Assembly (NCBI RefSeq): GCF_039654945.1
Contig: NW_027361766.1
Coordinates: 35,898,001 to 35,962,000 of the forward strand
Origin: Dendrobates tinctorius
Taxonomy: Eukaryota
DNA: 64,000 bases
Reading direction: 5' to 3'
A program made the position numbers and the translations under genes. The notes below the pieces were generated by a model. It saw only the letters and a program-made list of their open reading frames with translations. It ran no database searches and had not been told where the DNA came from. Below, piece by piece: positions 18,201 through 41,959 of this stretch (its first letter is position 1; each line of letters begins with the position of its first letter).

Positions 18201-19617
18201 TTCCTGGAGCTGAGCCTCCTGATGACTCTCACTCATTTCACTGGATGTGTCGTGATCTTGGTTACAGTTCGGATCAGAAAGTTCATTAACATATTGAGAT
18301 GTGAGTTGTGGTGAATCTGGCAATGGCAACTTCAGACTTGACACACTGCTACGGCTATGCAGCTTAGGGTTATGCGTGGCTTCTAGTGATTCTGCCTTGG
18401 CCAATGCTGTAGCAGCCTCTCTTTTTACCGCTAGGCTCTCTAAGGTGGCATCCACACATGCCTTCTCTAACTGCATCTTTCTCTCTTGCTCATCTCTTGC
18501 TAAGCATAACCTTCTCTCTTGCTCCTCTCTTTTTAAGCATAACCTTCTCTCTCAGTCTTCTCTTTCTTTGCGTGACCTGTTCTCTTGGTCTTCTCTTTCT
18601 ATGCGTGACCTTCTCTCTTGGTCTTCTAAGCGTGCTTTCTATAATTTAAGTTCTATCTCTTCTACAGCAAAGCTTGCTCGCATTTTGGCGGCTTCAGCAT
18701 TTGTGCATGCAATGGCGACTGCGCTGCTGATGGATACAGTCTTTGAGGAGACAGATATGGCAGATTTTGTCCTGTGTGATTTGTGGGACATGGTGTCTTA
18801 GGGGGATGCTTGGCTGTGCAGAGATTGCTGTAGCTGTATTAGTTTCTGTGTAGCTGGTGACTTGAATCTCACTAGATGGATTTCTGCAGTTTACTAGCTC
18901 CTGCAAGCTGGATGAAGGGATGTCTTTCTCTGAATTGCACTAGCTGGACAGCTGCTGTTCACTGTGGTCCTTCAAGATGGATGCTCTTCTCTCTGTATTC
19001 CCACTAGCTGGAGAGCCGTCGTTTCACTGTCCTGTCTTCAGCTAAATGAATGGGATTCATATAGCTTAACAAGCAGCTAAACCGCTATACCAGGGTCCAA
19101 TAAGGGAGACTGTAGTTGAATCTGTGGCTTATTGAACGTAGGTATATAGATGAAACTACAAATAAACATATCATACAATCAGTCAGTATGGGTACATAAA
19201 AATTCATAATATATATTATACAGATTACCTGGCTTATAGCTAACCAGGGGAGAGCTAACTAAAGAAGGTGATCTAGAACAGGGATAAATGTGGGAGCGTG
19301 GTTACTCACCGACGAAGCTGACGCAGGGGGAGAAGAGGGATGAGGTATTTCCAGTATGCAAACAGAAGGGAAAATGGTGGACTGGAGGGAAATGGGCTGA
19401 GCTAACCCACAATCCCTTGCAAACCTACCCAGGATGCATTGGGAATTGGAGGGAAATCAAGGAAACCAGAAACAATAACACTGCAGGTATTATTTTTGGC
19501 CACTAGATGGAGCTGGAAACAATAAACATTAAAATGTATGGCAAACTGAGCATTATACTGAATTTATGTTATGGAAATAAACAGTTAAGAGTCATTAATT
19601 GTGTTGGAGACAGAACA
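12216..19617 (-). mobile_element. Full-length BEL/Pao LTR retrotransposon (decayed)
   Basis: LTRs at 12216-12811 and 19028-19617 (TG...CA, roughly 95% identical by eye). PPT GACGGGGAG on - abuts the 3' LTR. The 5-bp flanks TATAT/CATGT form only a degenerate TSD. BEL-type gag-pol lies inside. Confidence 0.93.
12779..18791 (-). pseudogene. BEL/Pao gag-pol polyprotein (Gag with triple zinc knuckle, protease, RT, RNase H, integrase, C-terminal DUF5641-like region), multiply disrupted
   Basis: Knuckles CPLHQKPHPLLKC / CYKCCSSTTHLAQDC / CTECGTTDHNTALH; protease ILDDQSNRS; RT VVFDSSAK, FGNSPSP, FYVDN; RNase H VFADAS..TIPRLEL; integrase HNLVKH..CIAC, GLDMFGP, SDRGTNF, GGSWE; C-terminal WRQIQNLANTFW. 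Confidence 0.92.
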
Positions 19618-30000: not shown

Positions 30001-30789
30001 CGTGCACGCCGACCGCCATGTTACTCATGCTGATCTCAGAATAGGGAGAGCTGCTGCTGCTGATTCTGTAGGGAGAGCATTAGGCAGGGAAGAAGACACC
30101 AAAAACTGCTTCTGCTGCTAGAGATTTTGCCTGTACAACACACCAGTCACTGTGTGTGCAGTGCAAGTGGAGGCTATATTTTGCTGGATCAGCTGTGTTG
30201 GTTGTTAGGCTACCTTCTAAGGCTTCCTGACGGCTGCATTGCTGTTTTCCCACTGCTCTGCAAACTGCTTTTTTAAAAGCAATCCAAATTTTTTTTTTGT
30301 CCTGGTGAGGTACTGAGCGTGCATTTTTTCACACCATACAGCGGTGTACACTCCTCACACAGTACTGTGTAACGGCTGTTATCACGGCCACAGTGAAGCT
30401 ATCTGTGTGTGACTCTGTAAGAATAAGTCGAGGACATGTTCCGTTCTTACAGACCTCCACCTTCTAGTTTTGTCTGCTTTTCAAACAGTATATTTGCTGT
30501 TTGATCACATTCAAAACTATAGAGAGACAGCGTGTGTCAGTCCGTATACTTAAAAAACACGGAGCTTGACAATTTTACGGACCCCGGACAGCGGTGTACA
30601 TGCACGCACCTCTCTCAGTACCGTGTAACGGCTGTTATCACGGCCACAGTGAAGCTATCTGTGTGTTACTCTGTAAGGATAAGTCGAGGACATGTTCCGT
30701 TCTTACAGACCTACACTCTAGGGAGATTCCTATTCTGCCCAATTCTATATACACCTTGTAGTTTGTCATACACTAGCCAATTTCTGCCT

Positions 30790-32459
30790 GTGACATAGCG
30801 GTGTGATATTCACTGGGCCTCACACAATCCAACAGTGTCCACAAGTGTGTTCAGAAATTCTACATCTCCCCTGTCCTATAGTGACATTTTTCACACCTAC
30901 GACATTGAGCCTGTGACATAGCGGTGTGATATTAACTGGGCCTCACACAATCCAACAGTGTACACAAGTGTGTTCGGAAATTCTACATCTCCCCTGTCCT
31001 ATAGTGACATTTTTCACACCTACGACATTGAGCCTGTGACATAGCTGTGTGATATTAACTGGGCCTCACACAACAGTGTCCACAAGTGTGTTCAGAAATT
31101 CTACATCTCCCCTGTCCTATAGTGACATTTTTCACACCAGCGACATTGAGCCTGTGATAAAGCGGTGTGATATTGACTGGCCCTCACACAATCCAACAGT
31201 GTCCACAAGTGTGTTCAGAAATTCTAAATCTCCCCTGTCCTATAGTGACATTTTTCACACCTGCGACATTGAGCCTGTGACATAGCGGTGTGATATTAAC
31301 TGGGCCTCACACAATCCAACAGTGTCCACAAGTGTGTTCAGAAATTCTACATCTCCCCTGTCCTATAGTGACATTTTTCACACCTGCGACATTGAGCCTG
31401 TGACATAGCGGTGTGATATTAACTGGGCCTCACACAACAGTGTCCACAAGTGTGTTCAGAAATTCTACATCTCCCCTGTCCTATAGTGACATTTTTCACA
31501 CCTGCGACATTGAGCCTGTGACATAGCGGTGTGATGTTAACTGGGCCTCACACAATCAAACAGTGTCCACAAGTGTGTTCAGAAATTCTACATCTCCCCA
31601 GTCCTATAGTGACATTTTTCACACCTACGACATTGAGCCTGTGACATAGCGGTGTGATATTAACTGGGCCTCACACAACAGTGTCCACAAGTGTGTTCAG
31701 AAATTCTACATCTCCCCTGTCCTATAGTGACATTTTTCACACCTGCGACATTGAGCCTGTGACATAGCGGTGTGATATTAACTGGGCCTCACACAATCCA
31801 ACATTGTCCACAAGTGTGTTCAGAAATTCTACATCTCCCCTGTCCTATAGTGACATTTTTCACACCTGCGACATTGAGCCTGTGACATAGCGGTGTGATA
31901 TTAACTGGGCCTCACACAACAGTGTCCACAAGTGTTTTCAGAAATTCTACATCTCCCCTGTCCTATAGTGACATTTTTCACACCTGCGACATTGAGCCTG
32001 TGACATAGCGGTGTGATATTAACTGGGCCTCACACAATCCAACAGTGTCCACAAGTGTGTTCAGAAATTCTACATCTCCCCTGTCCTATAGTGACATTTT
32101 TCACACCTACGACATTGAGCCTGTGACACAGCGGTGTGATATTAACTGGGCCTCACACAATCCAACAGTGTCCACAAGTGTGTTCAGAAACTCTGCATCT
32201 CCCCTGTCCTATAGTGACATTTTTCACACCTGTGACATTGAGCCTGTGACATAGTGGTGTGATATTAACTGGGCCTCACACAATCCAACAGTGTCCACAA
32301 GTGTGTTCAGAAACTCTACATCTCCCCTGTCCTATAGTGACATTTTTCACACCTGCGACATTGAGCCTGTGACATAGCGGTGTGATATTAACTGGGCCTC
32401 ACACAATCCAACAGTGTCCACAAGTGTGTTCAGAAATTCTACGTCTCCCCTGTCCTATA
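30790..32459 (+). repeat. Tandem array of 123/118-bp units (13 complete + 1 partial) inside the hAT element
   Basis: Units start at 30790, 30913, 31036, 31154, 31277, 31400, 31518, 31641, 31759, 31882, 32000, 32123, 32246 and 32369, and are near-identical. Confidence 0.97.
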
Positions 32460-34338
32460 TACACCTTGTACCTTGTATTACATTACTATATAGTTTGTGG
32501 GATTTTGTGTACATTTTTACCAAAAATGAGGAAGGCTGGTGGAAGAGGCAGTGGAATTGGGCGGGGGTTGCCAGCTGGTAATGATGGTGTTGGTGGTGGA
32601 TCTGATGGTAGTGGCAAAAGCAAAATAGGACCGAATGCAGGAGGTGTTGAGCCTGCGTCATCGTCTGGCTCCACAAGGCCTCGAAGGCTTAGTTTTCTAG
32701 GAGTTGGCAAACCGCTTTTAAAGCCAGAGCTTCAGGAAAAAGTTTTGGCTTACATTGCTGACTCAGCCTCCAGCTCTATCACCTCCTCTTCTGAAGTTGT
32801 AAAAAATAAAAGCACTGAGTCGTCATTGGAGGCTCATGTTCATGAACCACACCTTTCCTTGTGTCCTTCACCCCAACCAAGATTGAAGGATGACGCAGGC
32901 CATACAACTGATTACTCCATGGAGCTGTTTTCACATACCATGACTGGGTTATCAAGTGAAATGGTGAATTACCCAGGCCAAGATGAATCTGACATGGAGT
33001 GCACTGATGCACAGCCACTGATACCTGATTCTGCTGGTACATTCAGTCAGAGCACTACATTGTCCTCGCAGTGTAATGAGCCAGATTCTGACCCTGATTA
33101 GACTCAGGTGCCCCTTCCCGCATACTATACCACCATACACGGTGACACAGAGGAAGGTGCACATGATATTGAAGAGGAGGTGATGGATGACCCAGTTGTT
33201 GACTCAGATTGGCATCCATTGTGGGAAGAGGGTGCTGCTTCCAATAGCTCAGATGAGGAGGAGGAGCATCCACAGCAGACATCGACATCGCAACAGCTGT
33301 TATCTGGCAGGCCCAGAGCACTCCAAAGACAGGTTCCAAAAATCAAAAGAGTTGCTGGACAGTTTGTCCAGACGGTCAAAATAGCACAGCGTGCTAGGCC
33401 GCAAAATGTCTTCCAAAGTAGGAAGAGTGCAGTGTGGCACTTTTTTGAACAAAATCCTGATGATCAGTGTGATGTACAATGTCTGCAAGATATGTTTTCT
33501 GTTGCAATGTGCTAATCTCTTTGTTTTCTCCACTTTTATTTTATACCTGTACTGTACATATTTTATGTCTCAATTTTATAGCAACTTTTATCTGTAATCA
33601 CTGTCCTCTTTCGGAAAATAAATGAAATAATTATTTAGATCTGTCTCCATGCTCTAAGAATCGAACTATACGCCTTTGATAGATAATCGCTACTAATTCA
33701 AGGGGTTTGCCACGGACCCTCTTAATTTAACACTGTGAATTAAGTAACCGTGACTGGTGGCAGCGCATTGTGCACGGCTATTGCGGCTTGCTGGCAGTCC
33801 AGAAGGGTCTTATATTGCTGAATAAGGGGCTGCGGCCACAGCATTGATAATTCCCTTACTGCAGAAGCCTAATTGCCGGTTCACAACAGGCAGCCCGTCC
33901 GGCGACCAATTATCCTAGGTGCAGTTCCCTGACTGACCTGAGGGTAAGGGGGGCGCCGGAGAGCTGCGAGTTCCAAAGTGGAACTGAGAAAGTGGGATAT
34001 ACATAAATCCCCGCAGTACTTGGAAGATTGATAGCAGTGGTGGGGCATCCAAATTAAACCCCCCTGCGGCAAATTGTAGAGCGAGATTAGCTTGCTGGAT
34101 ATTTTTGGTCACATGGTGCCAGTGGTGGGATAACTAAGATAAGCCCCAACGGTGCCTGTGATAGCCGTGTGCCGGCAGTGTGTCTCGTCCCTCCGTCCGC
34201 TGATACACCCGTGTCAGTGGTGGGACTGTGACATAGTGGTGACACAGGGTCCGCTGTCCGTCGCGTTTTGGTGGCAGCGGGACCCCCGTTAGTCGCCTCC
34301 GTAAGTGGACGAACGGCCGTGGGCTGTTCGTCACATAT

Positions 34339-34356
34339 TGGTGGCAGCGGTGGGAT
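34339..34356 (+). promoter_or_regulatory. Primer-binding site complementary to the tRNA-Leu (AAG-type) 3' end
   Basis: TGGTGGCAGCGGTGGGAT, 3 nt after the LTR end, is the reverse complement of ATCCCACCGCTGCCACCA (vertebrate tRNA-Leu 3' end, recalled from memory). Confidence 0.85.
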
Positions 34357-34552
34357 AATCCTAGAGCATTAGTGATTTGGTTTGAGCAATCATTCCTCTC
34401 ACTAAAAACCTGCACGGTTCCTGCGGGAATCCTGCATCATAGGTTTTGGAGAACAGACTCAGTGGTTACTAGTCCTGAGACATTAGTGTGTACTTGCAAG
34501 TATCCCCCTCCCGTTTCTTCGTTTTTCTTTTTCTATCTTTTATTTGGCAACC

Positions 34553-37500
34553 ATGGCGGCAAAAGGAGAACCTTGGTACAACCGGCAGACAAAGGAAGTT
34601 CTTGCTGGGTTATGCACGTACCAAGGCCTTGACGCCACGAACAAAAACAGAGCTCAAATGATCGCGGCTCTAGTGCAGCTGGACAACGACCAGAATCCAG
34701 CAAGAGCAGAAGTTGGCCCAAGTGGCAATGGGGCTGCAGCAGAGGCTCCACTCATGAGCGCGGGCCCCACATTCAACCAGAGCATGCTGGACCCCTACCT
34801 GCAAGTGGCCTTGGACGCACTCCCTGCCGAAGACCGTGATGGACGTCTGGCGCTGATCCAGCAAGCTCGAGAGAGAGCAGAGCAGCGAGCCGAGCGGGAG
34901 GCTGAGAGAGCCGAGCGCCAAGCAGAAGCTCAGAGGGCACATGAGCTGGAGATGCTCCGACAAGGGGGGCATGCCCCCACAGCCCGAAGCGGTGAGCCCA
35001 GCAGCGTCCAGACTCCTAAACCCCGGCTAGAGCATTTTCCCATGATGGAAAAAGACGGGGACTTGGACACGTTTCTGCGAGCCTTTGAGAAAGCCTGCAG
35101 ACAGTACCAGCTGCCTAGAGACCAATGGGCAAGGTACTTGACCCCAGGGCTAAAAGGCAAAGCCCTGGAGGCATTTGCTTCTCTTCCGCCATAAGCCGAT
35201 GACGACTATGACGCCATAAAGCAGGCGCTGATCGCCAAATACTGGCTGACACCTGAGGTATACCGAAAGAAGTTCCGGCACCTCCAACGTGGCCCACACG
35301 ATAGCTACAGTGATGTGGTGCAAGGACTCAGGACCCACTTTGACCAGTGGATCCATGGACTGTCCGTTGAAACCTTTGAGCAGCTACGGGACCTGATGAT
35401 CAAAGACCAGTTCCTGCATCTCTGCCCAGCTGAGGTCCGACAGTTCATCCTGGACCGCGAACCAACGAACGCGGACAAAGCGGCGCAGATCGCCGACAAC
35501 TACGAGGCCAACCGGAAGCTTGAGACGCAGAGGCCAGTCGCCACCAGCTGGAAAGGGGGTAAGCCAGCAACCAACCCCAATGCCCCAGCTAGCCGTCCCT
35601 CCGGAGGCCCAGTCCCTGTTGCCAACTACAGGCCGGCTACTGACAGTCGCCTGTGTCACCACTGCCAGCGGCCTGGTCACTTCTTTTACGCCTGTCCGAA
35701 TAGGCCGAAGAACCCCCCAGCCAAGGCCCCCGGGCCCAACGCCTCTGTTCTTTTGGTGGGAGGTGTGGTTGGGAGGGCTGACGACAACGTTCAACCTGTT
35801 CAGGTGGGGGCCCGTCTTGCTACAGGCCTCAAGGACACCGGGGCTGAACGAACCCTCATCCATCCTGGACTGGCGGCCCCTGAAGAGTATGTTGAGGGGA
35901 AAACCCTGACTGTCACCGGGATTGGAGGCACCCGTTGTCCCTTGCCAGTGGCACGAGTTTTTCTTGACTGGGGTGCCGGGAGCGGGTTGAGGGAGGTGGG
36001 AGTGTCTGAAAACCTGCCCACTGATGTTTTATTGGGGACTGACTTGGGACGGATGGTTGCATACTACGTCCGTGACCCCCTTCCCCAAACTGATAATAAG
36101 GGTAACGGTAACCCTGATGATGAAGAGTTTGTTGAGGGGAAACTGAATGTGTTACCTGCTAATGCCTTGATGAGTAATGATGCAACTAACAACCATTCCT
36201 TCCCCAGGTATGATGCTGATGCTGATGTGAATGTACCAAAGCAAACTGATAACCATTCTTCTCCTAGGAAGTATGATGATGATGTTGATGTATCTGTGCC
36301 GACTGAACCAGTTAACCCTTTCTTTGAAGCGGTAGATGTGTCCACAGGTACCGAAGTGCTCAGCCCCGTCACTCTGCGGAGTGAGACGGCTGAGGAACCC
36401 CTGGCAGGAGTAAGCAACGGTGCTCAAGGAAATGGGGAGGTGCATGGGGACCATGAGGAAGGTAATGCCATGCAGCTGACCAGTGCCACCGAGGAAGGTA
36501 ACTGGCCCATAAGTAGCACTGCTCCTGAAGTGTTGGGGGTGGATGGGGAGGTAGAGCCCAAGCCAGCACCGGCTGGTGGGTCTGTAGAAATCCCCAGGGA
36601 GACAGCATACATAGCAGCTGTCACACGCAGTCAGAGTGCCCAGATCGCAGGTAACGCACTGTCTTCTGGACCCTCCGCTGCTACAGGAGAGACTGAACCA
36701 GAGGTGAACCCAGAGCCGGTTCCAGAGGGTCCCAGTAAAGAGGGGACCCTGACGTCACTTCTGGCAGCCTCCAGCATGGAGTTCCAGGCTGCTCTGCACT
36801 CAGATGCCAGCCTGGAGAAATTGAGAGGTCTCGCCGAGACGCCCACCTCCAAGTCTGATAAGGAGAGGGTGTTCTGGGAACGAGGAAGGTTGTACCGGGA
36901 GAAAGTACCCGGATATCCTAAAAAGGAGTGGTTGAGGGAAAGACAGCTGGTCGTCCCCTATCAGTTCAGAACCGAGTTGTTGCGGATTGCCCATGAGATT
37001 CCACTCGCTGGACACTTGGGGATCAGCAAAACAAAGGCACGGCTGTCTCAACACTTCTATTGGCCCAAGATGGGGACAGATGTAACACACTACTGCCGCT
37101 CCTGCGCCACCTGTCAAAAAGTGGGTAAGGCGGGGCCTGCTCTTAAGGCTCCCCTTATTCCTTTGCCGGTGATAGAGGAGCCTTTCCAGAGAATCGCGGT
37201 GGACATTGTAGGACCGCTGTCCGTCCCCAGCAGCTCCGGAAAGCGATACATTCTCACCGTGGTAGACTACGCTACCCGGTACCCAGAGGCAGTAGCTCTG
37301 TCTTCAACCAGGGCAGATAAGGTGGCTGACGCACTGGTGACCATCTTTTCAAGAGTAGGATTTCCCAGGGAGATGCTTACCGATCAAGGGCCCCAATTCA
37401 TGTCTCGCCTAATGGAGGCTCTCTGTGAGAAAATGCAGGTGACGCAGCTGGTATCGAGTCCGTATCACCCACAGACTAATGGTTTGTGTGAACGTTTCAA

Positions 37501-39574
37501 TGGTACCCTCAAACAGATGCTCCGCATACTGGTTGAGACCCAAGGGCGCGACTGGGAGCGGTACCTCCCACACCTGCTGTTCGCTTACAGAGAAGTTCCG
37601 CAGGCCTCGACCGGGTTCTCCCCCTTCGAGCTCCTGTATGGCAGGCGAGTCCGGAGACCCCTTGGGTTGATAAGAGAATCCTGGGAAGATGAGCCAAACC
37701 CCACAGAAGTGTCCATCGTGGATTATGTCATGCGCTTCCGTGACAAGATGCAGACCTTGACGCAGTTGGTGCATGACAACATGACGCAGGCTCAGGCTGA
37801 CCAGAAGCGCTGGTACGACCAGAACGCCCGGGAGCGGACCTACCAGGTGGGTCAAAAGGTGTGGGCGCTGGTCCCTGTACCAACGGATAAGCTTCAGGCA
37901 GCCTGGGAAGGCCCGTACGTCGTCCACCAACAGCTCAACCCGGTCACCTACGTGGTCACGCTTGACCATGCTCGGGGTAGGCGCAAGGCCTTTCACGTCA
38001 ACATGCTGAAGGAGCACTACGAACGTGAAGCTTGCGTCCTACCGGTCTGCAATCTGCCAGAGGATGGGGAGGAAGATCCCCTCCTGGACATGCTGGCCCA
38101 GGCCAAGGCCAATGGGTCCATTGAGGACATGGAGATAAGTGGTTCGCTCACCGTGTCCCAGCGGTTGCAGTTGATGGCCACCCTGGAACTCTTCCGGCCC
38201 GTGTTCACCAATCGTCCTGGGAGGACGGAGTTAGCAGTTCATGAGGTGGACACCGGGAATCACGCCCCATTACGGCGAACACCTTATCGGATCTCTGAAA
38301 CGGTGCAACAAGTCATGCGCCAAGAGATCGATGAGATGTTAAGGCTGGGGGTGATTCGACGGTCAAAAAGCGCGTGGGCTTCACCTGTAGTCCTCGTGCC
38401 TAAAAAGGATCGAACCACCCGGTTCTGCGTGGACTACAGGGGGCTCAACGCCATCACAACCTCTGATGCCCACCCAATGCCGCGCATCGAGGATCTGCTC
38501 GAGCGGTTGACAAACGCCAACTACATATCCATCATGGATTTGAGTCGGGGATACTGGCAGATTCCCCTGAGCCCTGAGGCGCAGGAGAAATCCGCCTTTA
38601 TCACCCCCTTTGGACTGTACGAGTCCACGGTCATGCCCTTCGGCATGAAGAATGCCCCTGCCACTTTCCAGCGGATGGTCAACCACCTGCTTCGGGGACT
38701 GGAGGAGTACGCGGTGGCGTACTTAGACGATATTGCCGTCTTCAGTTCCACCTGGGAGGAACACCTTCAGCACCTCCAGGAGGTGCTCAAGCGTCTTCAC
38801 CAGGCAGGCCTGACCATCAAGCCGGGGAAGTGCCAGATAGGCATGCACAAGGTCCACTACCTGGGGCACCGGGTAGGCGGGGGTTCCATGAGTCCAGAGC
38901 CAGAAAAAGTGGACGCAATTGTGTCCTGGCCCACCCCCAGGACCAAGAAGCAGGTGAAGTCCTTCTTGGGCACTGCAGGGTACTATAGGCGGTTCGTACA
39001 GGACTATAGCGCCCTTGCCAAACCCTTGACTGACCTCACCAAGCAGAGGCTACCCCAAACAGTCAACTGGACAGATGACTGTGAGGCGGCTTTCCAAGCT
39101 TTGAAAGCAGCCCTGTGCAACTCTCCAGTGTTGATAGCAGTCGACAGCAGTCGCCCTTTTCTGGTACAGACCGACGCCAGCGAGTTTGGCCTCGGTGCTG
39201 TGCTTAGCCAGGTCGATTCGGGGGACCAAGAGCACCCCGTGTTGTATCTGAGCCGGAAACTTTTGCCGAGGGAAGTGGCATACTCGACCATCGAGAAGGA
39301 GTGTCTGGCCATGGTGTGGGCACTACAGCGTTTGCAGCCCTACCTGTACGGGCGTGCCTTCACGGTGGTAACTGACCACAACCCTCTGAGCTGGTTGCAC
39401 ACAGTGTCCGGAACCAATGGAAGATTGCTCCGCTGGAGCCTTGCCCTTCAACAGTACGATTTTACTGTAAAACACAGGAAGGGCAGTGAAAACGGCAATG
39501 CCGATGGGTTGTCCCGCCGGGGCGAACCCGCTGAGGTGCGCATGGCCGATTACCGAGAGGTAATGCCTCCTTAG
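34553..39574 (+). CDS. Gmr1-type gag-pol polyprotein (SCAN-like capsid, CCHC, protease, integrase, RT, RNase H) with one in-frame TAA at 35192-35194
   Basis: ORFs 34544-35194 and 35315-39574 share a frame and the gap between them has no other stop. Motifs: CHHCQRPGHFFYAC; LKDTGA; HEIPLAGH..CATC, AVDIVGP, TDQG, CERFNG, WEGPY; then YLDD; then QTDAS..YSTIEKE. Integrase precedes RT. Confidence 0.93.
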
Positions 39575-41959
39575 CGCCCTCTTAAGGGGGGAGGTGTGAT
39601 GTACAATGTCTGCAAGATATGTTTTCTGTTGCAATGTGCTAACAAACCCTCCATTTTCTTTGAGAAGCTGCCTGCCAGTGTCTCAGTTAGATTGCACACT
39701 ACAGCAGCTTCCCTTCCCCCGAGTGCCATAAACCAATTTCCTGTCACCCCATTTGGCTTCTCTAAGCCTCAGCTGAAAGAGGGAAAAAAAGTGCGGGAAA
39801 GGAAAACTCTTTGTTTGAAATAAAGGTTAGAGGTAACCCTTTAAGAGCCTGCCCTGCGAAAACCGTACCAAGTAGAGATATGGAAATCATATTTTTGTAA
39901 CCTGAGCGGTCCCAGCTTCGATACCCCCTTACTTTCGAAGTTCTACCCTGTCCAGAACATGAGATAGGATTTCCGCCCAAATGGACGGTCATATCGCATA
40001 GATGTTTGATGTTTTCTTGATAGGCTCATTACGCTGGGAAACATGATACCACTGATGAGTCCATACCAGCTTCTCCCATAAAGTTATAGCTAATCTAAGT
40101 TTTGTAGCCAAAACATAACTTGGATAAGAGAGGTGGGATCAACCCAGAATGCACCTCTCTGTGATGTCACATAGGAAAGTCTATAAGGCATTCCCTGGCA
40201 GAACCAGCTCAGAAGAGCTCCAATCCTCGTGCTGAGCAGAACCCAGATGAGTGGAGACGTGCAGCTCCGCCTCCACCCCCCTTAAAACCACATGGGATGC
40301 CTAACAACAATATGGAACTGTGAGTGTAATCTCTTTGTTTTCTCCACTTTTATTTTATACCTGTACTGTACATATTTTATGTCTCAATTTTATAGCAACT
40401 TTTATCTGTAATCACTGTCCTCTTTCGGAAAATAAATGAAATAATTATTTAGATCTGTCTCCATGCTCTAAGAATCGAACTATACGCCTTTAATAGATAA
40501 TCGCTACTAATTCAAGGGGTTTGCCACGGACCCTCTTAATTTAACACTGTGAATTAAGTAACCGTGACTGGTGGCAGCGCATTGTGCACGGCTATTGCGG
40601 CTTGCTGGCAGTCCAGAAGGGTCTTATATTTCTGAATAAGGGGCTGTGGCCACAGCATTGATAATTCCCTTACTGCAGAAGCCTAATTGCCGGTTCACAA
40701 CAGGCAGCCCGTCCGGCGACCAATTATCCTAGGTGCAGTTCCCTGACTGACCTGAGGGTAAGGGGGGCGCCGGAGAGCTGCGAGTTCCAAAGTGGAACTG
40801 AGAAAGTGGGATATACATAAATCCCCGCAGTACTTGGAAGATTGATAGCAGTGGTGGGGCATCCAAATTAAACCCCCCCTGCGGCAAATTGTAGAGCGAG
40901 ATTAGCTTGCTGGATATTTTTGGTCACATGGTGCCAGTGGTGGGATAACTAAGATAAGCCCCAACGGTGCCTGTGATAGCCGTGTGCCGGCAGTGTGTCT
41001 CGTCCCTCCGTCCGCTGATACACCCGTGTCAGTGGTGGGACTGTGACATAGTGGTGACACAGGGTCCGCTGTCCGTCACGTTTTGGTGGCAGCGGGACCC
41101 CCGTTAGTCGCCTCCGTAAGTGGACGAACGGCCGTGGGCTGTTCGTCACAATCAGGCCAAGGTTATCTGTAAGAAGTGCGCAAAGACCTTTAGCCGAGGG
41201 AAAAATCTGAAAAATTTGAATACCAGTTGCATGCTTAGACATTTAACCAGCATGCACTTGCAAGCGTGGACACAACACCAAACCTCAAGTACCACATGTG
41301 CAACTGATCACAAAGAAGGTAGTCAGCAACACTACATTGTTTCCCCCACTGTAAGCCCTTCCACCGGTTAGCACAGCAGCAAATGTTGAGGTGTCGTTGC
41401 AAGGCCAAAGCAGTCAGGGAATCCCACTGTTATATCAACGAAAGACTGAATCTAGGCCATCAGAAAGAACACTAACTCCATGACCATCATCAACCCTCTC
41501 TCAGTCCGCCTTGTCCACTGCTAGTTCCACCATATGCAGCTCTCAAGTCCAGCTCACCCTCCCAGAGACTATGAGTAGGTCAAGAAAGTACTCAGTCTCT
41601 CATCTGCGTACACTGGGTTTGAACGCCCACATTGCCAAACTAATCTCGTTAGAGATGATGCCCTATTGGTTGGTGGAAAGCGCAGCTTTCCGCGAACTCA
41701 TGGCCTATGCAGTACCACGCTATGACCTACCCAGTCGCCACTTCTTCTCTCGCAAAGCCATCCCAGCCCTCCACCATCATGTGAAAGACCGCATTGTCCA
41801 TGCACTCAAGCAGTCAGTGAGTGGAAAGGTGCACCTCACAACAGATGCATGGTCCAGTCGGCATGGCCAGGGCCGTTACATGTCCATCACTGCGCACTGG
41901 GTTAATGTGGAGGATGCAGGGTCCACAGGGGACAGCGGTGGTGGGACAGTGCTGCCTAT

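What the first reader, a model, noticed from the sequence alone, without database searches (positions are those of the whole stretch)
33750..34356. Ladder of fossil 'LTR end + tRNA-Leu PBS' units with unique spacers inside the Gmr1 LTR
Seen: the true PBS context is GTCACA-tat-TGGTGGCAGCGGTGGGAT (34330-34356). Inside the LTR lie at least five more PBS-like copies: 33755 (TGGTGGCAGCG, after GTGAC), 34029 (13/18), 34114 (16/18, directly after GTCACA, identical to the real LTR terminus), 34209 (13/18) and 34269 (12 nt perfect, after GTCRCG-ttt). A partial GTGACA-tag-TGGTG lies at 34228-34241. The last copies are spaced 60-95 bp apart by non-repetitive sequence, and all recur in the 3' LTR (40569, 40843, 40929, 41024, 41084), so they replicate as part of U5. 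Established: a PBS is normally single, lies outside the LTR, defines the U5 end and is regenerated from the tRNA each cycle. Inference: the LTR may have grown stepwise as priming moved to new downstream sites, leaving a polarised repeat-spacer record of former termini. Alternatively the copies are alternative priming sites or decoys for 3' tRNA fragments. I do not know of a description of this arrangement.
Basis: partly seen in the sequence, partly recalled or inferred. Interest (0 to 1): 0.8.

Follow-up and report, generated by a model that had tools for sequence, protein, structure and literature searches.

The report
Fossil primer sites stacked in LTR
The long terminal repeat of a young poison-frog Gmr1-like retrotransposon ends in a row of decayed copies of its own "repeat end plus tRNA-Leu primer site" junction, which shows that the repeat grew by duplicating that junction; it is a real and unusual structure but probably a relic, not a working device.

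Summary
They exceed dinucleotide shuffles by far: five hits of at least 12/18 against 0.26 expected, 0 of 2000 shuffles.

The element is a young, full-length Gmr1-like Ty3/gypsy retrotransposon of a dendrobatid frog. Its primer site matches the 18-nt 3' end of tRNA-Leu-AAG exactly.

Related copies from Dendrobates tinctorius and two Ranitomeya species show what the ladder is:
- It is a variable-number tandem array in U5. Each unit is a copy of the LTR-end/primer-site junction.
- Units 1 and 2 are old paralogues shared by both genera.
- Units next to the working primer site are lineage-specific, and their number differs between copies.
- Every LTR pair examined contains all its units, so priming uses only the last site.
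- The upstream copies are losing tRNA complementarity (10 to 17 of 18).

So "fossil termini, stepwise polar growth" holds. "Unique spacers" and "priming moved into new leader sites" do not.

The motif at 33755 is different. It is a conserved block, and a sense copy of the primer-site half occurs in the LTR of 7 of 8 frog Gmr1-like elements. I cannot explain this.

The scan already reported the same array on other copies of this genome (s1-382839, s1-377260).

The parts
33462..33466 (+). Target-site duplication ATCAG, left copy (right copy at 41151-41155)
   Evidence: The same 5-mer flanks both LTRs. The host BED zinc-finger reading frame continues across the insertion.
33467..34335 (+). 5' LTR (869 nt). 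From 33513 on it is near-identical to the 3' LTR.
   Evidence: 823 nt with 5 differences. The start is set by the TSD. The first 46 nt do not match the 3' LTR, which I cannot explain.
33754..33765 (+). Conserved block CTGGTGGCAGCG in the upstream, putative U3 part of the LTR. It equals the first 11 nt of the PBS.
   Evidence: It is invariant in Dendrobates and Ranitomeya copies while its flanks diverge. A like 9-mer lies in the LTR of 7 of 8 frog Gmr1-like elements.
33860..34017 (+). Conserved LTR core, probably R (inferred)
   Evidence: It is the only LTR part shared at 80% or more with contigs of two further organisms. It aligns with the Ranitomeya LTRs.
34029..34113 (+). Unit 1 (85 nt): decayed PBS copy at 34029-34046, spacer, then the LTR-end copy GTCACA at 34108-34113
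   Evidence: 14/18 to the Leu-TAG form. It is orthologous to Ranitomeya unit 1 (z 5.3). In rare family variants the real PBS follows the core at this place.
34114..34208 (+). Unit 2 (95 nt): PBS copy at 34114-34131 (17/18 to the Leu-TAG form) plus a copy of the old leader start
   Evidence: It is a paralogue of unit 1. The motif scores 10 to 17 of 18 among the copies.
34209..34236 (+). Unit 3 (28 nt): PBS copy at 34209-34226, then the LTR-end-like GTGACATAG
34237..34268 (+). Unit 3b (32 nt): TGGTGACACAGG..., ending in the LTR-end copy GTCGCG-TTT
   Evidence: Homologous 30- to 31-nt units are present once or twice in Ranitomeya copies.
34269..34338 (+). Unit 4 (70 nt), the youngest and specific to this lineage: 12 exact PBS nt, about 38 nt of insert with a hairpin, then the working LTR end GTCACA and TAT
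   Evidence: It is absent from Ranitomeya, where the real PBS sits at the corresponding place. Flank homology is 12 to 13 of 16. Predicted fold z -3.1.
34339..34356 (+). Working PBS, complementary to the 3' 18 nt of tRNA-Leu-AAG
   Evidence: It is the exact reverse complement of tRF-Leu-AAG-001 as printed in PMC9233364. It lies next to the LTR end.
34544..39574 (+). Gag-pol frame with the order SCAN, integrase, RT, RNase H. One in-frame stop at 35192-35194.
40327..41150 (+). 3' LTR, the part identical to the 5' LTR, with all five motif copies (40569, 40843, 40929, 41024, 41084)

Best explanation
The last 320 nt or so of this Gmr1-like LTR are a tandem array built by repeated duplication of the junction between the LTR end and the tRNA-Leu primer-binding site.

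Each duplication gave two junctions in a row. Reverse transcription kept starting at the downstream intact site. The upstream copy was therefore copied into minus-strand strong-stop DNA and became part of U5 in both LTRs.

Freed from use, the upstream copies decayed. New units were added next to the working site, so the array is ordered by age.

Units were most likely gained and lost by out-of-register template switching of reverse transcriptase between the repeated PBS-like motifs of co-packaged RNAs. Slippage at the DNA level is also possible.

Shown: the motifs, their homology, their polarity, their variable number, and the exclusive use of the last site.
Inferred: the duplication mechanism, the R/U5 limits, and the lack of present function.
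For: Enrichment over shuffles, and presence in both LTRs.

A nearly identical copy in Dendrobates tinctorius (L008, about 97% identity) has the same array.

Ranitomeya relatives (74 to 86% identity) share the core and units 1 and 2, then differ:
- L012 and L011a have one 30-nt unit.
- L010 and L011b have two (32 and 31 nt).
- L009 has one 52-nt unit.
- The window has units of 28, 32 and 70 nt.

The 30-nt unit consists of an LTR end, a 3-nt spacer and a PBS copy, with no extra spacer.

Paralogy of the units:
- Ranitomeya unit 1 against unit 2: z 2.7 to 3.3.
- Window unit 2 against Ranitomeya unit 1: z 5.5.
- The 16 nt in front of unit 4's motif match the 16 nt in front of the real PBS at 12 or 13 positions, binomial P 3e-4 to 3e-5.

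Unit 4's motif is a hybrid: 12 exact PBS nt followed by unit-3b-like sequence. A repeat-mediated switch would give this.

All eight LTR pairs examined end after the last unit.

The unit-2 motif ranges from 10 to 17 of 18 among copies, with different changes in the 5' nucleotides that pair with the tRNA 3' end.

Contigs of the same species show variants:
- The core runs almost straight into the PBS.
- Unit 1 is missing.
- A back-joint from 34203 to 34114 fits a repeated unit 2.

Dendropsophus (L001) has one fossil junction 118 nt inside its LTR, so the process recurs.
Against: - Within the window itself the spacers of units 1 and 2 no longer align (z -0.8). Their paralogy rests on the Ranitomeya sequences.
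- About 38 nt of unit 4 have no detectable source.
- Decay is not monotonic along the array (14, 17, 14, about 11, 12 of 18).
- Unit 4 keeps 12 exact nt. That is as long as the working PBS of some LTR retrotransposons, so it might still bind tRNA.
- The direction of change for the rare short variants (ancestral, or deletion products) is not settled.
- I saw only about ten LTRs, not a genome-wide census.
- No RNA or cDNA data were available.
Confidence: 0.7

Rival explanations
1. tRNA priming jumped to new, partly complementary sites further down the leader. The tRNA copy then repaired each new site into a full PBS. This left former termini separated by unique pieces of leader.
For: The copies lie inside both LTRs and are ordered by age. 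Within the window most spacers do not align with each other. About 38 nt of unit 4 have no source.
Against: The leader after the working PBS is conserved between lineages, so the PBS did not move into it. Each unit carries its own LTR-end copy, which a tRNA cannot supply. The units are paralogues. The 30-nt units have no spacer at all.
Confidence: 0.12
2. The internal copies work today. They could be spare or alternative priming sites, extra tRNA-Leu loading sites, or decoys for 3' tRNA-Leu fragments that would otherwise block the real PBS.
For: Unit 4 keeps 12 exact nt and unit 2 keeps 17/18 to a tRNA-Leu isodecoder. The 11-mer at 33755 is conserved across genera. A sense copy of the 9-mer TGGTGGCAG lies in the LTR of 7 of 8 frog Gmr1-like elements against 0.04 expected. 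The region is predicted to be structured.
Against: The U5 copies change at different positions in each lineage, also in the nucleotides that pair with the tRNA's CCA end. The neighbouring 16 nt are better conserved than the unit-2 motif. No LTR ends at an internal junction. The number of units varies freely between young copies.
Confidence: 0.15
3. Chance matches in a G/T-rich LTR, or an assembly artefact.
For: The 3' half of the LTR is 55% G+C and rich in GTG.
Against: 0 of 2000 dinucleotide shuffles reach the observed counts. Both LTRs, a second species' assembly and two Ranitomeya assemblies carry the homologous units.
Confidence: 0.01

Closest known systems
Retroviral vectors engineered with two primer-binding sites (Voronin and Pathak, J Virol 2004; only the title was verified, in the reference list of PMC4227088; the paper itself was not held)
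   Same: Two PBS lie in tandem downstream of U5. From my own knowledge of that work, starting at the downstream site carries the upstream site into U5 of both LTRs. That is the step needed here.
   Different: Those are engineered, and both sites work. Here the array is natural, has up to five copies, only the last is used, and the others are decayed.
Extra tRNA-complementary segments outside the PBS: Ty3 bipartite PBS in U3, Ty1 boxes, HIV-1 primer activation signal in U5 (from my own knowledge)
   Same: There is sequence in the LTR or near the PBS that can pair with the primer tRNA. The conserved 11-mer at 33755 lies in the upstream LTR part, as the Ty3 3' PBS does.
   Different: Those segments pair with other parts of the tRNA (the T and D arms). 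The copies here repeat the complement of the same 3' end, so one tRNA cannot bind both.
Tandem repeats in LTRs and leaders of retroviruses and gypsy-like elements (U3 enhancer repeats, leader minisatellites)
   Same: Head-to-tail units whose number varies between copies, as template switching would produce.
   Different: The unit here is the integration end plus the PBS. It lies in U5, and its spread into both LTRs depends on which PBS primes.
Gmr1 clade of Ty3/gypsy elements (Gadus morhua Gmr1 and deuterostome relatives)
   Same: Integrase lies upstream of RT and RNase H, with a SCAN-like capsid domain and LTRs.
   Different: I found no description of a U5 array of PBS copies for this clade in the papers searched.

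Membership tests
Gmr1-like Ty3/gypsy LTR retrotransposon | Pol domain order with integrase before RT and RNase H | tested here: met
   Pfam: Integrase_H2C2 and rve at residues 547-736, RVT_1 at 1028-1187, RNase H at 1252-1381
Gmr1-like Ty3/gypsy LTR retrotransposon | Two LTRs, a 5-bp target-site duplication, and a PBS next to the 5' LTR | tested here: met
   TSD ATCAG, PBS 3 nt after the LTR end
Gmr1-like Ty3/gypsy LTR retrotransposon | Closest proteins are Gmr1-type gag-pol with a SCAN domain | tested here: met
   Frog and turtle proteins with the same domain set at 53 to 71% identity. Gag N-terminal part 88% identical to Dendrobates tinctorius.
Variable-number tandem array | Head-to-tail units that are homologous to each other | tested here: met
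   Within the window alone the evidence is weak.
Variable-number tandem array | Unit number differs between copies | tested here: met
   One against two 30-nt units among R. imitator and R. variabilis copies; three units in the window lineage; joints in contigs
Working dual-PBS element | LTRs of some copies end at the upstream junction, with the rest of the array only in the leader | tested here: not met
   All eight LTR pairs end after the last unit. The sample is small.
Ty3-type bipartite PBS | The LTR segment is complementary to the T or D arm of the primer tRNA | tested here: not met
   The LTR motif equals the PBS 5' half, so it pairs with the same tRNA 3' end
tRNA read-through or tRNA-derived insertion | tRNA complement continues beyond 18 nt into the T loop | tested here: not met
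   After GGGAT the copies continue AATCC or AACTA, not TCGAACC. No tRNA genes. No Rfam match above threshold.

The most novel reading that the evidence does not exclude
Frog Gmr1-like elements need a second copy of the tRNA-Leu 3'-end binding half-site inside the LTR for reverse transcription or its control. The U5 ladder is a by-product of this two-site system. It records past primer use, including a switch between tRNA-Leu isodecoders (CAGTGG in the old units, CAGCGG in the young ones).
Probability: 0.15. Interest if true: 0.7.

Novelty: new variant of a known kind. Interest (0 to 1): 0.55.

Why it matters
A PBS is taken to be single and to mark the outer limit of U5. Here a natural family carries a dated stack of its former limits inside the LTR.

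That gives a readable record of how an LTR lengthens. It is also a natural counterpart to engineered two-PBS vectors.

In annotation, LTR and PBS finders can place the LTR end at an internal junction.

A PBS half-site recurs in the LTRs of otherwise unalignable frog Gmr1-like elements. If it proves functional, it would point to an undescribed cis element of reverse transcription.

Tried and rejected
- Spacer-against-spacer alignments within the window gave nothing significant. The homology showed only through the relatives.
- Distant frog elements (Dendropsophus, Lithobates, Rana, Xenopus, Leptodactylus, Pristimantis; L001-L007) have LTRs that do not align with this one and no ladder. They did show single half-site copies.
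- L006 (Hyperolius) was not usable: spliced gene model, satellite flanks.
- No tRNA genes in the window or the loci. The tRNA-Leu assignment therefore rests on human tRF sequences printed in PMC9233364.
- The Rfam scan gave only a sub-threshold snoRNA hit, taken as noise.
- Literature searches for natural multiple-PBS LTRs found nothing relevant. One search failed on a short term.
- I considered that the motif at 33755 marks the transcription start. TATA-like sequences upstream are not conserved between lineages, so I dropped this.
- I considered that the short variants in organisms D and E prove an ancestral short LTR. The 80% threshold would also hide diverged units, so I treat this as weak evidence.

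Full report
**What is there**

The window holds a full-length LTR retrotransposon. The two LTRs are near-identical from 33513 to 34335 and from 40327 to 41150, with 5 differences in 823 nt. The long frame between them (34544-39574) carries a SCAN-like capsid domain, then integrase, then RT and RNase H. This is the Gmr1 order. The frame has one in-frame stop at 35192-35194.

A 5-bp duplication, ATCAG, flanks the element. The host reading frame, a BED zinc finger, continues across the insertion. This puts the true 5' LTR start at 33467.

The PBS at 34339-34356 lies 3 nt after the LTR end GTCACA. It is the exact reverse complement of the 18-nt 3' fragment of tRNA-Leu-AAG as printed in PMC9233364.

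**Check of the observation**

No other place in the 64 kb reaches 13/18 on either strand.

Dinucleotide shuffles of the LTR give 0.26 hits of at least 12/18 against 5 observed, and 0.04 hits of at least 13/18 against 3 observed. None of 2000 shuffles reaches either count.

The same paper prints a second isodecoder fragment (Leu-TAG) that differs by C to T. Scored against that form, the copies at 34029, 34114 and 34209 match 14, 17 and 14 of 18.

**Relatives**

Pol homologues are frog and turtle Gmr1-type proteins at 53 to 71% identity. Elements fetched for six distant frogs have LTRs that do not align with this one and carry no ladder.

The N-terminal Gag piece found close kin. Dendrobates tinctorius is 88% identical, and Ranitomeya imitator and R. 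variabilis are more distant. The host is therefore a dendrobatid.

- Locus L008 (D. tinctorius) holds a copy about 97% identical, with the same array.
- Loci L009-L012 (Ranitomeya) hold a sister family, 74 to 86% identical. Several copies are young: the LTR pairs of L009 and L010 are about 99.8% identical.

**Anatomy from the comparison**

After a conserved core (33860-34017), all dendrobatid LTRs carry unit 1 and unit 2. Each starts with a PBS-like motif followed by a conserved stretch (CTAA..ATAAGCCCC), and each ends in an LTR-end-like CACA.

Units 1 and 2 are paralogues:
- Within Ranitomeya the spacers alone align at z 2.7 to 3.3.
- The window's unit 2 aligns with Ranitomeya unit 1 at z 5.5.
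- Within the window the signal is gone.

Downstream of unit 2 the lineages differ:
- L012 and L011a have one 30-nt unit.
- L010 and L011b have two (32 and 31 nt).
- L009 has one 52-nt unit.
- The window and D. tinctorius have units of 28, 32 and 70 nt.

The 30-nt unit is just an LTR end, a 3-nt spacer and a PBS copy.

In the window, the 16 nt in front of the 34269 motif match the 16 nt in front of the real PBS at 12 positions, and at 13 in the 3' LTR copy (P about 3e-4 to 3e-5). The motif itself is 12 exact PBS nucleotides joined to sequence like unit 3b.

The leader after the working PBS is conserved in all lineages. The added material therefore lies upstream of the working PBS, and the site of the window's unit 4 motif corresponds to the real PBS of Ranitomeya.

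**Contigs of the same and related species**

These show further variants:
- The core is followed after about 13 to 23 nt by the PBS.
- Unit 1 is missing.
- 45 nt of unit 4 are replaced.
- A back-joint from 34203 to 34114 fits a repeated unit 2.

These contigs are short and their depth is low, so I use them only as support for variable unit number.

**Are the internal copies in use?**

Every LTR pair I could delimit ends after its last unit.

The unit-2 motif scores 10 to 17 of 18 among 15 LTR copies. The changes differ between lineages and also hit the nucleotides that would pair with the tRNA's CCA end. The 16 nt after the motif are better conserved.

This is the pattern of relics. Unit 4's 12 exact nucleotides leave some room for residual tRNA binding.

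**Mechanism**

- Established knowledge: minus-strand strong-stop DNA runs from the PBS to the RNA 5' end, and it defines U5 in both LTRs.
- What follows from it: with two junctions in tandem, starting at the downstream one puts the upstream one into both LTRs. Two-PBS retroviral vectors are the engineered precedent. I could verify only the title, because the paper was not held.
- Inferred: gain and loss of units by out-of-register template switching between the repeated motifs. This fits the hybrid make-up of unit 4 and the unit-number differences. DNA slippage is not excluded.

A predicted RNA fold of 34240-34400 is more stable than shuffles (z -3.1). It pairs the unit 4 motif with an upstream CCGCTG-containing stretch that resembles the tRNA 3' end. 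This is prediction only.

**The motif at 33755**

Its GTGAC prefix is not conserved. The block CTGGTGGCAGC, however, is invariant in all dendrobatid copies within a diverged part of the LTR.

Over eight frog Gmr1-like elements, the exact 9-mer TGGTGGCAG occurs nine times in sense orientation inside LTRs, in 7 of 8 elements, against 0.04 expected. It never occurs antisense, and never in 83 kb of internal sequence.

In Dendropsophus the copy lies 118 nt inside the LTR and follows an LTR-end-like ATTGTGAC. That looks like one more fossil junction.

Two explanations remain open: recurrent junction duplication, or a selected second tRNA-Leu site. This is the part of the finding I cannot explain.

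**Earlier notes of this scan**

s1-382839 and s1-377260 describe the same kind of array on other copies in this genome. The follow-up of s1-382839 reached the same reading, including a conserved short motif. I treated them as leads. The tests above are my own.

**Limits**

- About ten LTRs were examined, not a census.
- No RNA or cDNA data were available.
- The tRNA assignment rests on human fragment sequences.
- The R and U5 limits are inferred.

**Verdict**

The structure is real, and as far as I could find it is undescribed. It is best read as a polar, variable tandem array of fossil LTR-end/PBS junctions. It is of moderate interest, and higher if the LTR half-site proves functional.

Noticed in passing
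window 33467-33512 versus 40292-40326: The first 46 nt of the 5' LTR do not match the stretch in front of 40327 in the 3' LTR, although the remaining 823 nt differ at only 5 places. The D. tinctorius copy (L008, about 19430-19480) has a third version. No clear polypurine tract lies in front of the 3' LTR, unlike in L010.
   Followed up: partly
window 33108-33466 and 41156-41368: The element sits inside a BED zinc-finger coding sequence. The downstream part matches Pfam zf-BED positions 16-43. The upstream part ends with the SAVWHFF motif.
   Followed up: yes
window 30707-32585: Tandem array of at least 14 units of 118 or 123 bp, lying inside or next to an open frame (32382-33101) upstream of the BED finger. 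No Pfam match.
   Followed up: no
window 35192-35194: A single in-frame stop splits the otherwise continuous gag-pol frame. Relatives have the frame open there.
   Followed up: partly
L002 5762-5785, L004 5443-5466, L009 9787-9806, L005 5798-5820: Young relatives (LTR pairs 99.7 to 100% identical) carry non-canonical primer sites: a ranid form with inserted bases, and Ranitomeya and Leptodactylus forms with 2-nt insertions. A perfect 18-nt match therefore seems not to be required.
   Followed up: no
L008 14306-14335 and minus strand near 70: Another LTR element, inserted in the D. tinctorius copy, has GTCACA, 4 nt, then a 16/18 tRNA-Leu primer site. This is a second family using the same primer.
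   Followed up: no
L011 1-21029: R. imitator locus with several elements in a row that share LTRs of two types (one or two 30-nt units), repeated with a period of about 9.7 kb.
   Followed up: partly
L001 5640-5662: The Dendropsophus Gmr1-like LTR holds one fossil junction (ATTGTGAC, GTG, TGGTGGCAGCAG) 118 nt before its end. This shows the same process in a distant lineage.
   Followed up: partly
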